Shown piece after piece: positions 13,501 to 16,500 of a DNA stretch of 64,000 nucleotides. The DNA comes from Diadema antillarum (lineage: Eukaryota). The stretch's first letter is position 1. Each line of letters begins with the position of its first letter. The notes under the pieces were generated by a model that ran no database searches, had not been told where the DNA came from, and saw only the letters and a program-made list of their open reading frames with translations. Made by a program: the position numbers and the translations under genes. The stretch spans positions 1,860,001-1,924,000 of the forward strand of contig NW_027270926.1 in assembly GCF_040938485.1 (NCBI RefSeq). The letters are read 5' to 3'.

Positions 13501-16500
13501 GTTAGTGTCGGGTTTATGTTCCTACACGTGTGTGTAATCACTGAATTTATGCGAATGATTGTGGAATAAATTGAAATTGAAGTGAAACTTAGAATATGGG
13601 CCCTATGTTGGCAATTGTGCACTTTACGGCCCTATATTATCGGTACCTCATTCGCCGTGTGCTAAGGTGATATCCCATAAACCATTCCGCATTGAGCAGC
13701 TGGCGAACTTCTCTTGCTGTATGGAACGCCGTTTCACAAGTGATAAGGTCACTAAAAGCCCGCCTCACTCACGGCGCTTCTGCGGAGCTACATGTAGCTC
13801 ATCGCGTAAACCAACCACGCCGGCGAGGCTTGCGCTTGTGTGTGTGTGTCCATGTAGTGGCTGCCCGTAAATCGGTAGCTATACACACTTCGCACGGCGT
13901 CTGGTAGACTGTGTAGACGAAATAAACACTAACAGACTGACGAATCGAGATAAGATTTTGTTTTTTTTATTATTATTTTACAGAATAATTCCGCCAAGGC
14001 CGCAGCGGACATATGCCCTCCGCAATAGGTTTAATTAGTGATACCCTGCTTAATATATCACGTAAAATTCATTCATTTAAAATCATGATTGAAGCATGGA
14101 AGTCTACCACTCGTTGCGTTCCAGTTGTGTGTCAATTAATGCACAACTCGCGCTCGATCTAGCCGCGCCGCACAGGCAGGGAAGGGCGTTAGAGCAACCA
14201 TGTGGCGTACCCTAAGAGCTTTCATCACGCACACACACGTTGACACATTCACACACACTGCATGCATCCCAACACGAAATCTTACACACATGTACACAGT
14301 ACAGACACAGTGCCGGAAGACCCGCTGTCGAACCGCGGTGCCTGATAGGAACTCGAATTCGCACGCACTGCTCGATTAGGGTAAAATCTCGCACCGATAA
14401 TATTATTGATTATAGGGCCGTAAAGTGCACAATTGCCCCTATGTTCTACTTCTAGACACTAATGATACTAATGATAAAGACAATGTCTGAGACTGAGGCA
14501 TAGCCTGACTAACCTTGCCAGAGTACTAGGGGGACTGTTGAATACCCATCCTGGGAATGAGGGATTGCAAACTGTAAGTACATCCATTCCTCATACTTCC
14601 TTTTTGAGAGACAAATCATCGTGCCTGAATGGCTCTGTTGCTATTGGAGCATACTGCGATCCTACTGATCAATTTACCGGTACCGGCTCTGTTTTCGTAA
14701 ATTATGCCCTGTATGTACCCAGAGTCGATACAAGCTCTTTGTTTGCAAGGTACATGTATGACCCAATCTGGAATTCGAGGTTGTCTAACAGAAACAAATT
14801 CCTGGACAACATTGTAACACTATATCATTCACCCGCAAGAGAGAAAGGACATATCCTACATCACCTCCAACCAAATCGAACCGTTGTAATGGGCCTGATC
14901 ATGTGTTCAGGTGATGTTCAAATGAATCCTGGCCCTGTCCACAAACCCAGGCGCACTGAACCATGTCCCCTTTGTAGCAAATTAGTATTCAGCAAAAATA
15001 AACTCAAATGTGAAGATTGTCAAGGATCTTTTCACCTCAGCTGTGCCGGAAAAACCCTCAAACAGGTCCAAACCTTAGCTGCAAATTCTACACCATGGTA
15101 TTGTTCTAGTTGCTGTGCACCTTGCAGTGTGTGTGATGGTGACGTCTTGAGAGATCATCATGCAGTTCAATGCGACAGCTGTGATAAGTGGCTACACACA
15201 GCATGCTGTAACATTGACTCCGATACGTATTTTTCACTTATGAATAGCTCTTGCAACTGGATTTGTCCTCAATGTGAAAATCTGTCCTTTTCTGGCTCAT
15301 TCTTCAGCGTAGATCTAAACATCTCGTCTGAAAATCCCTTTGATGTTTTGAACTCCATAGACACTTCTCAGCCGACTTCGCCAAAAGATGTCTCATCTAA
15401 AATGCCAAATCGAAATTTCACTAATTCTATTAAGACGAAGCGCCCAATGAATAAGAAGGACGACTTCAAGATACTTCTTACAAATTGTCAAAGTGTCAGA
15501 TCTAAAGCCGGAGACATTGAGGTGCTCGTAGACTCTGTCAAACCTGATATCCTGTGTGGAACCGAGTCATGGTTAAACCCCAGCATCAACAGTAGTGAGA
15601 TTTTTCCTGATCATTTTGATGTGCACAGGAAAGACAGGACCCCATCGAAAATTGGAGGGGGGGTTTTCCAGGCTGTCAAACTGGACCTGGCTACTTCTCA
15701 TTGCAGTGAATATAACTCAGATTGTGAGATTCTCTGGACTGAAACCAAAATTAAAGGCTGTAGGCCACTGCTCATTGGAGTTTTTTACCGTCCACCCAAC
15801 GATAAAGGTGAAGCAATTGAGCACCTTGTGGAATCACTCACCAGAATAGGGCACAAAATTAACTCACATAATGTTATACTCACTGGGGACTTCAACTTGC
15901 CAAATATCTCATGGTCTGATCACAGTGTTGAGAGTGGCAGTAACACTGGAGTTGCCGGTAAACTGATCTCCCTAGCTGAGGAATTTGGATTGTATCAACA
16001 TGTTAGTTCTGCCACGAGAAGATATGGAAAAACTGAGAGTATACTTGATTTGGTCTTCACAAACAATCCTGAAATTGTACAGAAGGTCACATGTAGGGAA
16101 GGAATTTCCGACCACGATGCTGTTGTAATCGATGTCAGAATCACTCCCTTCAGAAAACGTCCAACCAAAAGGAAAATATTTCTACGAAACAAGGCTGATG
16201 TAGAGGGTATCAAGCAATCACTCCATGAATTTGCTGAATATTATCGTAACAACTGTCTTGATTATGATGTGAACAGAAAATGGGAAGAGATTAAATCAAA
16301 CATTCTCTCAATAATGGAACGCCATGTGCCACATAAATTGTCTTCATCCCGCTTCAACCTACCTTGGTTCGACAGAACCCTGCGTCGTATGGTCAAGAAA
16401 AAACAACGTTTGTACAATAAAGCTAGAAAATCGGAAAAACCAGCCGATTGGGAAATTTTCAGATCTTTTAGGAAATCCACCCACAAACTCATTAGGAAAT

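What the first reader, a model, noticed from the sequence alone, without database searches (positions are those of the whole stretch)
14865..14936. 2A-like StopGo motif with an E-to-Q variant (GDVQMNPGP) ahead of the LINE PHD-APE-RT
Seen: ...[19 protein letters not shown]|P at aa114-133 (DVQMNPGP at nt 14913-14936), just before the PHD fingers. Known: viral 2A peptides end in D(V/I)ExNPG|P and cause ribosomal skipping; 2A-like motifs are reported at this position in APE-type non-LTR elements of sea urchin and amphioxus; some sea-urchin 2A-like N-termini double as signal peptides. Here the conserved Glu is Gln and the upstream stretch is hydrophobic. Inference: partial skipping could give both a fused and a released polymerase plus a short N-terminal peptide, tuning activity or localisation. 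This is the strongest candidate for unusual biology in the window.
Basis: partly seen in the sequence, partly recalled or inferred. Interest (0 to 1): 0.72.

Follow-up and report, generated by a model that had tools for sequence, protein, structure and literature searches.

The report
Known-type 2A-like site in LINE
A truncated copy of a young sea-urchin-type jumping gene (LINE) carries a virus-like "ribosome-skipping" 2A motif with Gln in place of the usual Glu; the motif is real and strongly conserved, but this kind of site, its position and this variant were already described in sea-urchin LINEs in 2013.

Summary
GDVQMNPGP is encoded at window 14910-14936, in frame in a PHD-APE-RT ORF. No such match occurs in shuffled sequence.

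The window copy (14514-18353) is 5'-truncated. Full-length copies elsewhere in the genome start about 1.0 kb further 5' and open with MGNMHK. There the motif is aa 156-164 of a 1272-aa single ORF, after a conserved orphan N-terminal protein rather than a short peptide.

A related Strongylocentrotus purpuratus family keeps ...GLIMC(S/A)GDVQxNPGP. Synonymous sites between the two are saturated, and the 2A segment has the lowest non-synonymous divergence of the whole ORF. So the peptide, Gln included, is under purifying selection.

Gln at this position is not unusual here. Of 668 GD(V/I/M)xxNPGP sites in this genome, 138 have Gln and 178 have Glu.

Odon et al. 2013 already reported the 2A-PHD-APE-RT layout, and an active natural E-to-Q 2A (STR-69_SP). 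Partial StopGo is therefore the best reading, but it is untested here.

The proposed signal-peptide starts at M73, M118 and M122 are not supported. The signal-like hydrophobic stretch lies at the family's true N-terminus.

The scan has noted the same kind of site on other DNA of this genome (for example s1-208703, s1-224649).

Verdict: a new member of a known kind.

The parts
14514..18353 (+). 5'-truncated copy of a young single-ORF PHD-APE-RT non-LTR retrotransposon (LINE). It lacks the family's 696-nt 5'UTR and the first 19 codons.
   Evidence: The 5' junction was mapped against full-length copy L014. The shared 3'UTR and variable (ACAGAT)n tail, followed by unrelated flanks, appear in 8+ copies. 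Copies are 97-100% identical.
14538..18257 (+). Open frame of the window copy (1239 codons plus stop). It is colinear with, and ends at the same stop as, copies that keep the whole ORF. The family's ATG is absent.
14514..14864 (+). Remnant of the conserved pre-2A N-terminal protein (family aa 20 to about 140). It includes the island [16 protein letters not shown], which is identical in the S. purpuratus relative.
   Evidence: pN is 0.31 with saturated pS.
14865..14936 (+). 2A-like (StopGo-type) segment: Leu/Ile-rich context [12 protein letters not shown] followed by the core DVQMNPGP. The predicted break is between G (14931-14933) and P (14934-14936).
   Evidence: The related S. purpuratus family has RTIILGLIMCAGDVQPNPGP, with synonymous changes in 5 of the 8 conserved codons of GDVQxNPGP.
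14949..15275 (+). Two PHD-type zinc fingers.
   Evidence: Pfam PF00628 with 2 stretches and a PF00130-like finger.
15483..16124 (+). Apurinic/apyrimidinic-type endonuclease domain.
   Evidence: Pfam PF03372 and PF14529.
16956..17690 (+). Reverse transcriptase domain.
   Evidence: Pfam PF00078, E 8e-34.
18258..18353 (+). 3'UTR ending in a short (ATACAG)n microsatellite tail (about 18335-18353).
   Evidence: The repeat number differs between copies and the flanks diverge right after it.

Best explanation
The motif is a genuine 2A-like (StopGo-type) recoding site that belongs to a young echinoid LINE family.

In full-length copies, one 1272-aa ORF encodes three parts in order:
- a conserved orphan N-terminal protein (aa 1 to about 142) with a hydrophobic, signal-like stretch near its start;
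- the 2A segment (aa 143-164: [19 protein letters not shown]|P);
- the PHD-APE-RT polymerase.

Inferred mechanism: while the nascent Leu/Ile-rich segment and the D, Q and N side chains sit in the exit tunnel, peptide-bond formation to Pro164 fails in a fraction of ribosomes. The N-terminal protein is then released and translation carries on, giving a separate PHD-APE-RT. Gln at p14 probably gives sub-maximal separation, so both fused and separated products are made.

The copy in the window is a 5'-truncated insertion without promoter or start codon. It carries the site as a passenger.

Shown here: the motif, its frame, its conservation at the peptide level, the family structure, and the abundance of Gln variants. 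Inferred, not shown: any skipping, its efficiency, and the role of the N-terminal protein.
For: - Motif and frame.
- Not chance.
- Ten near-identical copies with different flanks and a depth gradient rising about 20-fold towards the 3' end indicate a recently active LINE family.
- Full-length copies share a sharp 5' end, a 696-nt 5'UTR and the start MGNMHK.
- A related S. purpuratus family (L060, open ORF of 1231 aa from MGTERR) has the same layout and GDVQPNPGP.
- Between the two families pS is about 0.87 (saturated). pN is lowest in the 2A segment (0.13), against RT 0.15, APE 0.18, PHD 0.24 and pre-2A 0.31. Five of the 8 conserved motif codons changed synonymously, and only the free 'x' position changed residue (M/P).
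- A third related lineage has LFMGLIICAGDVQVNPGP.
- Gln-bearing families are numerous and multicopy (138 sites, several types with many identical copies), so Gln is compatible with successful retrotransposition.
- Literature: natural E-to-Q STR-69_SP is active, and Q-to-E did not improve it (PMC3708506). E14Q keeps 56% or 26% activity; E14 stacks on A3640; Leu-rich ...(A/S/C)G upstream motifs form a recognised class (PMC12846837).
Against: - No translation assay and no RNA data. No run on record as RNA holds the family, and the runs laid were contigs with a DNA-type profile.
- Odon et al. found that many LINE 2A-likes with a good core motif are weak or inactive in rabbit reticulocyte lysate because of their upstream context.
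- A 2026 preprint reports that most retrotransposon 2A-likes lower protein abundance rather than skip (PMC13405545).
- Conservation shows the peptide is constrained. It does not show what it does.
- The motif lies about 155 aa from the N-terminus, further in than the 40-80 aa typical in Odon et al.
Confidence: 0.62

Rival explanations
1. The conserved peptide acts mainly as a translational attenuator. It stalls ribosomes and lowers the yield of the downstream PHD-APE-RT (self-restraint of the element), with little or no release of separate products.
For: PMC13405545: 59% of tested ORF2p-associated 2A-like peptides fell in a 'reduced abundance' class. Odon et al. and Heras et al. proposed down-regulation of ORF2 products. 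Non-Glu p14 residues dominate in this genome (73% of sites), as expected if maximal skipping is not what is selected.
Against: Natural E-to-Q and E-to-H sites tested so far do separate products. A conserved upstream protein of about 140 aa is easier to explain if it is released as a product of its own.
Confidence: 0.2
2. An inactive relic. An ancestral 2A lost activity through E-to-Q and is retained only because it is part of a linker.
For: Odon et al. raise this for CR1-clade elements with substitutions at Glu. No activity data exist for this family.
Against: The 2A segment is the least diverged part of the ORF between families whose synonymous sites are saturated. The core keeps every residue despite 5 synonymous codon changes. 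Linkers nearby diverge far more (pN 0.42).
Confidence: 0.08
3. One reading: the hydrophobic stretch next to the motif is an N-terminal signal peptide (translation starting at M73, M118 or M122), as in sea-urchin NLR 2A-like signal sequences. This would give dual targeting of the polymerase.
For: SpNLR 2A-like sequences do work as signal sequences (PMC4981915). VVMGLIMC is hydrophobic.
Against: Those NLR sequences are the first 26 aa of the protein. Here the ORF and its MG start are conserved about 140-155 aa upstream in both species, and the region between is under purifying selection. M118/M149 is Leu in the S. purpuratus relative. The hydrophobic stretch matches the Leu-rich 2A upstream class. 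A signal-like segment does exist, but at aa 15-32 of the full ORF. It is cut through in the window copy.
Confidence: 0.05
4. A chance occurrence of NPGP in a LINE ORF.
For: None beyond the shortness of the motif.
Against: 0 expected in shuffles and in the reversed-pattern control, against 1 in the window and 668 in the genome. Conserved between species.
Confidence: 0.01

Closest known systems
STR-69_SP, an L2-clade non-LTR element of Strongylocentrotus purpuratus (Odon et al. 2013, PMC3708506)
   Same: A 2A-like site in the N-terminal part of the APE-RT ORF of a sea-urchin LINE, with the same single E-to-Q change in GD(V/I)ExNPGP. It was shown to be active in vitro, and Q-to-E did not improve it.
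   Different: A different family, and its sequence could not be compared here because no supplement is held. No PHD is reported for STR-69_SP. The clade of the present family was not determined.
2A-PHD-APE-RT elements: Crack-17_BF, CR1-1/17/26_BF, STR-24/25/34/35_SP (Odon et al. 2013)
   Same: [quoted passage not shown] Single-ORF elements without ORF1.
   Different: In those elements the 2A is about 40-80 aa from the N-terminus. Here it follows about 155 aa, including a conserved orphan domain. Whether the family equals one of the STR entries could not be checked.
FMDV 2A (F2A) and its E14Q mutant (Donnelly et al. 2001, as cited in PMC12846837)
   Same: Core xGDV(E/Q)xNPG|P with a Leu-rich ...(A/S/C)G upstream context. 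E14Q retains 26-56% activity.
   Different: A viral polyprotein site with Glu in nature. Here Gln is the conserved natural residue in a cellular retroelement.
SpNLR 2A-like signal sequences (Roulston et al. 2016, PMC4981915)
   Same: Sea-urchin 2A-like peptides with hydrophobic upstream residues. Partial recoding gives two fates for the downstream protein.
   Different: Those are the extreme N-terminal 26 aa of NLR proteins. Here the site is internal, at aa 143-164.
L1Tc / Ingi 2A of trypanosomes (Heras et al. 2006)
   Same: A 2A at the N-terminus of an APE-type non-LTR ORF, with copy-to-copy variants of reduced activity.
   Different: Canonical DIEQNPGP, directly upstream of APE, no PHD, in a protist host.

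Membership tests
2A / StopGo recoding peptide | Core octapeptide D(V/I)ExNPGP, extended set (D/G/C/N)(V/I)ExNPGP | tested here: inconclusive
   DVQMNPGP matches 7 of 8 positions. p14 is Gln, not Glu. Gln is outside the consensus but is a documented partly active variant.
2A / StopGo recoding peptide | Gly at p11 and a suitable upstream context, such as a Leu-rich motif ending (A/S/C)G | tested here: met
   The upstream hexapeptide is LIMCSG, and LIMCAG in the S. purpuratus relative. This was compared by eye with the LLLLSG-like class of PMC12846837. No quantitative motif scan was run.
2A / StopGo recoding peptide | In frame inside a long ORF that continues after the final Pro | tested here: met
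   The ORF continues for 1106 codons through PHD, APE and RT.
2A / StopGo recoding peptide | Selection at the peptide level | tested here: met
   pN is 0.13 with saturated pS. Five synonymous codon changes occur in the core between the two families.
2A / StopGo recoding peptide | Two separate translation products from one ORF, with a ribosome pause at G18/P19 | not testable with these tools
   This needs a reporter assay or ribosome profiling. No run on record as RNA was found.
APE-type non-LTR retrotransposon (CR1/L2/Crack/Rex1 group) with an N-terminal 2A-like sequence | APE and RT domains in one ORF; 5' truncation of copies; 3' microsatellite tail; multicopy | tested here: met
   Pfam domains; truncated and full-length copies; (ACAGAT)n tail; 3'-biased depth.
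APE-type non-LTR retrotransposon (CR1/L2/Crack/Rex1 group) with an N-terminal 2A-like sequence | Assignment to a named clade by RT phylogeny (RTclass1) | not tested
   No reference RT set (Repbase) is on hand, and the supplement of PMC3708506 is not held.
APE-type non-LTR retrotransposon (CR1/L2/Crack/Rex1 group) with an N-terminal 2A-like sequence | No separate ORF1 | tested here: met
   The 696-nt 5'UTR of full-length copies holds only short uORFs of 5-35 codons.
2A-like signal sequence (SpNLR2A type) | The 2A-like peptide is itself the extreme N-terminus (about 26 aa) of the protein | tested here: not met
   The site is aa 143-164. The upstream ORF and its start are conserved in both species.
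2A-like signal sequence (SpNLR2A type) | Predicted co-translational signal peptide | tested here: inconclusive
   Hydropathy only. The N-terminal segment at aa 15-32 scores KD(19) 1.56-1.72 but has an internal Arg/Lys. No SignalP is available.

The most novel reading that the evidence does not exclude
The 2A site may be one element of a conserved three-part leader that many echinoid single-ORF LINEs use in place of ORF1: a signal-like hydrophobic N-terminus, a lineage-specific orphan domain of about 50-140 aa, and a 2A with a non-Glu p14 residue.

On this reading, co-translational targeting by the leader would bring the LINE mRNA and ribosome to the ER. StopGo would then free the PHD-APE-RT into the cytosol. 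The p14 residue (Gln here; Gln, Asn, His, Ala or Ser elsewhere) would be selected to set the released-to-fused ratio.

Hydrophobic leaders were seen in most of the roughly 11 families inspected. 73% of genome sites are non-Glu.
Probability: 0.15. Interest if true: 0.6.

Novelty: new member of a known kind. Interest (0 to 1): 0.27.

Why it matters
For the field this is confirmation rather than discovery. It adds a well-resolved, recently active family, together with a related family in another species, to the known set of 2A-bearing APE-type LINEs.

It also gives cleaner evolutionary evidence than was available in 2013 that a Gln-containing 2A core is maintained by selection. The 2A segment has the lowest pN of the ORF although synonymous sites are saturated.

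Two by-products may be useful:
- In this genome canonical Glu is a minority (27%) at p14 of GD(V/I/M)xxNPGP sites. This argues that LINEs select for something other than maximal skipping.
- The 2A is preceded by a conserved orphan protein with no detectable relatives among 1.84 billion representative proteins. This protein is a candidate ORF1 substitute and deserves an experiment.

Tried and rejected
- **Within-family conservation.** All 10 copies have the identical 27 nt. The copies are 97-100% identical overall, so this says little. I rely on the between-family comparison instead.
- **dN/dS.** dS is not computable because pS exceeds 0.75 in most regions. Only pN/pS proportions are reported.
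- **Homologues of the N-terminal 164 aa.** All searches came back empty or uninformative:
  - Pfam: 0 hits.
  - ESM Atlas: best score 0.76, uninformative.
  - phmmer against 1.84 billion representatives: 0 hits at E <= 0.001.
  - Own genome: only the family's own copies.
- **Structure of the N-terminal protein.** AlphaFold2 on a 3-sequence alignment gave mean pLDDT 32.7. That is unusable, so no fold search was run.
- **Expression.** No run on record as RNA holds the family. The runs laid were contigs with a DNA-type profile, so they give no information on transcripts, start sites or strand.
- **Word search for more orthologues.** It returned only the S. purpuratus model P0001 and a 98% identical copy, P0002.
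- **Odon et al. supplement.** The supplementary FASTA, needed for comparison with the STR elements and for clade assignment, is not held.
- **E14 in Sharma et al. 2012.** No matching text.
- **Rejected readings.** A chance motif, a signal peptide starting at M73/M118/M122, and 'short N-terminal peptide'.
- **Tools left unused.** Complex prediction is not applicable.

Full report
**1. What is in the window**

Window 14910-14936 (+) reads GGT GAT GTT CAA ATG AAT CCT GGC CCT, which encodes GDVQMNPGP. It lies in a frame that is open from 14538 to 18257.

Pfam places these domains downstream of the motif:
- two PHD-type fingers (ORF aa 138-246);
- an Exo_endo_phos endonuclease (316-529);
- RVT_1 (807-1051, E 8e-34).

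A D(V/I/M)xxNPGP DNA pattern has one match in the window, against 0.00 expected from 100 shuffles.

**2. The window copy is a truncated member of a young family**

- A DNA search of the window's own assembly (G000, 1.75 Gb) found 10 copies that are 97-100% identical over the first 763 nt of the ORF.
- Their 3' ends share a 3'UTR of about 77 nt followed by a variable (ACAGAT)n tail. The flanks after the tail are unrelated, so these are independent insertions.
- Five copies extend further 5' than the window copy and all begin at the same base, AGAGGGCGCTTCG....
- In these copies a 696-nt 5'UTR, carrying only uORFs of 5-35 codons, precedes an ATG (MGNMHKSEF...). This ATG opens a single ORF of 1272 aa, with no ORF1.
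- The window copy joins this sequence only at 14514, inside codon 19/20 of the family ORF, and ends at about 18353. It has neither the family's promoter region nor its start codon.
- Some copies keep the whole ORF open. Others have frameshifts or premature stops, and one other copy is also 5'-truncated.
- Contigs of public runs of the same organism show word depth rising about 20-fold from the 5' to the 3' end of the element, the usual signature of LINE 5' truncation. They list no variant inside the motif. These runs are contigs with a DNA-type profile. No run on record as RNA was found, so expression is unknown.

**3. The motif in family coordinates**

In the full ORF, G of GDVQ is aa 156 and the final Pro is aa 164. 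If the site works, the upstream product would be a 163-aa protein, not a short peptide.

**4. Conservation beyond the family**

The only database relative sharing the N-terminal region is S. purpuratus LOC115923809 (P0001). Its annotated model begins MCAGDVQPNPGP....

The genomic locus (L060, AAGJ06000014.1) shows that the frame is in fact open for 1231 aa from an upstream MGTERR... start, which aligns with MGNMHK....

Amino-acid identity by region:

| Region | Identity |
|---|---|
| pre-2A | 39% (with an identical island [16 protein letters not shown]) |
| 2A segment | 73% |
| PHD | 63% |
| APE | 71% |
| RT | 75% |

Codon-level comparison:
- Synonymous sites are saturated everywhere (pS about 0.87).
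- The non-synonymous proportion is lowest in the 2A segment (0.13). The other regions give RT 0.15, APE 0.18, PHD 0.24, pre-2A 0.31 and linker 0.42.
- Within GDVQxNPGP, five of the eight conserved codons differ synonymously, and only the free x position changes residue (Met/Pro).
- Gln is CAA in both families.

This is direct evidence for purifying selection on the peptide, Gln included. It also shows that the pre-2A region is coding.

Two further observations fit this. A third, decayed lineage in this genome has LFMGLIICAGDVQVNPGP. A second S. purpuratus-like copy (P0002, from a Logan assembly) also keeps GDVQPNPGP.

**5. How unusual is Gln?**

Not unusual here.
- GD(V/I/M)xxNPGP occurs 668 times in the assembly, with 0 in the reversed-pattern control.
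- 138 of these sites (21%) have Gln and 178 (27%) have Glu.
- A hand tally of the first 100 listed rows gave E 26, Q 20, N 15, H 15, A 8, S 7, D 4, K 4, C 1.
- The Gln sites fall into more than ten codon-distinct types, several with many identical copies. Gln-bearing LINEs therefore proliferate.
- The assembly seems to hold both haplotypes in places (pairs of identical hits on different contigs), so counts are of sites, not insertions.

A maximum-likelihood tree of the PHD-APE part of 11 families was built; three short rows were left out. It shows:
- the window family and the S. purpuratus family are sisters (80/88);
- an Asn family (L034) joins them next (96/95), then a Gln family (L056) (81/95);
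- the three Glu families form their own clade (99/99);
- further Gln families lie elsewhere (L054, and the distant L055/L059).

On this small sample, p14 has changed repeatedly among these LINEs.

**6. What is known**

Odon et al. 2013 (PMC3708506) reported:
- elements with a PHD between the 2A and the APE (Crack-17_BF, CR1-1/17/26_BF, STR-24/25/34/35_SP);
- a tendency of such elements to lack ORF1;
- frequent substitutions at the Glu;
- an active natural E-to-Q site (STR-69_SP), for which Q-to-E gave no improvement.

Li et al. 2026 (PMC12846837) show:
- E14 stacks on A3640 of 28S rRNA;
- earlier E14Q mutants had 56% or 26% activity;
- a natural p14 = His variant is more than 95% active;
- Leu-rich upstream motifs ending in (A/S/C)G form a recognised class. 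LIMCSG fits this class by eye.

A 2026 preprint (PMC13405545) finds that most retrotransposon 2A-likes reduce protein abundance rather than skip.

Roulston et al. 2016 (PMC4981915) show signal-sequence function only for 2A-likes that are the first 26 aa of NLR proteins.

**7. Mechanism**

Best reading (0.62): a StopGo-type site of the known LINE kind. It probably works sub-maximally, separating a conserved N-terminal protein from PHD-APE-RT in full-length elements. The window copy carries it passively.

Rivals:
- attenuator without separation (0.20);
- inactive relic (0.08), disfavoured;
- signal peptide from internal Mets (0.05), disfavoured by the conserved upstream ORF and by Leu replacing M118 in the S. 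purpuratus relative;
- chance (0.01).

**8. The N-terminal protein**

No relatives and no usable fold model were found:
- Pfam: none.
- ESM Atlas: uninformative.
- phmmer against 1.84 billion representatives: 0 hits.
- AlphaFold2: pLDDT 32.7.

It begins with basic residues followed by a hydrophobic stretch (aa 15-32, KD19 1.56-1.72) that contains a conserved internal Arg/Lys.

Most of the other 2A-bearing families inspected also start with a hydrophobic, signal-like leader. I tested this by hydropathy only.

**9. Verdict**

The feature is real, conserved and correctly spotted. In kind, position and variant it is already described. The scan has flagged the same kind of site on several other pieces of this genome. 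It is a new member of a known kind, of modest interest. The open questions are the function of the orphan pre-2A protein and why non-Glu p14 residues dominate.

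Noticed in passing
G000 contigs C137 and C647 (e.g. C647:133617-345994; C137:11002-91376 and 1394064-1475059): Canonical GDVEINPGP sites with identical DNA recur every 20-60 kb in arrays on the same strand. This looks like a tandem gene family, possibly NLR genes with a 2A-like first exon as in Roulston 2016 and scan note s1-217779, rather than LINE copies.
   Followed up: no
L060 (S. purpuratus AAGJ06000014.1, locus coordinates 2653-6345): The NCBI gene model LOC115923809 (P0001, 733 aa) is a LINE ORF annotated from an internal Met just before the 2A motif. 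The genomic frame is open for 1231 aa from an upstream MGTERR start and runs on through the RT.
   Followed up: yes
Loci L034, L044, L046, L048, L052, L054, L055, L056 (G000): Many unrelated 2A-bearing LINE families start with a short hydrophobic, signal-peptide-like leader directly after the first Met, followed by a 50-140 aa spacer and then the 2A. Judged by hydropathy only.
   Followed up: partly
G000, genome-wide: Only 27% of GD(V/I/M)xxNPGP sites have the canonical Glu at p14. Gln accounts for 21%, and Asn, His, Ala, Ser, Asp and Lys make up the rest (hand tally of 100 rows).
   Followed up: partly
G000, e.g. C124/C618, C1061/C1007, C44/C193: Many hits come as pairs with identical scores and structure on different contigs. 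This suggests the 1.75-Gb assembly retains both haplotypes in places, so copy counts are inflated.
   Followed up: no
L014:1212-1907 (5'UTR of full-length copies): The 696-nt 5'UTR has five upstream ATGs with uORFs of 5-35 codons ahead of the conserved MGNMHK start. How ribosomes reach the main ATG is unclear.
   Followed up: no
window 33003-33638 (-): A 212-aa ORF has a weak, sub-threshold Asp_protease_2 match (E 0.007, 17.5 bits against a cutoff of 24.3). It is possibly a remnant of an LTR-type element.
   Followed up: no
window 12000-22000: G+C is 0.42-0.44 here against 0.35-0.39 in much of the window. The LINE copy explains only 14514-18353, and the flanks were not examined.
   Followed up: no
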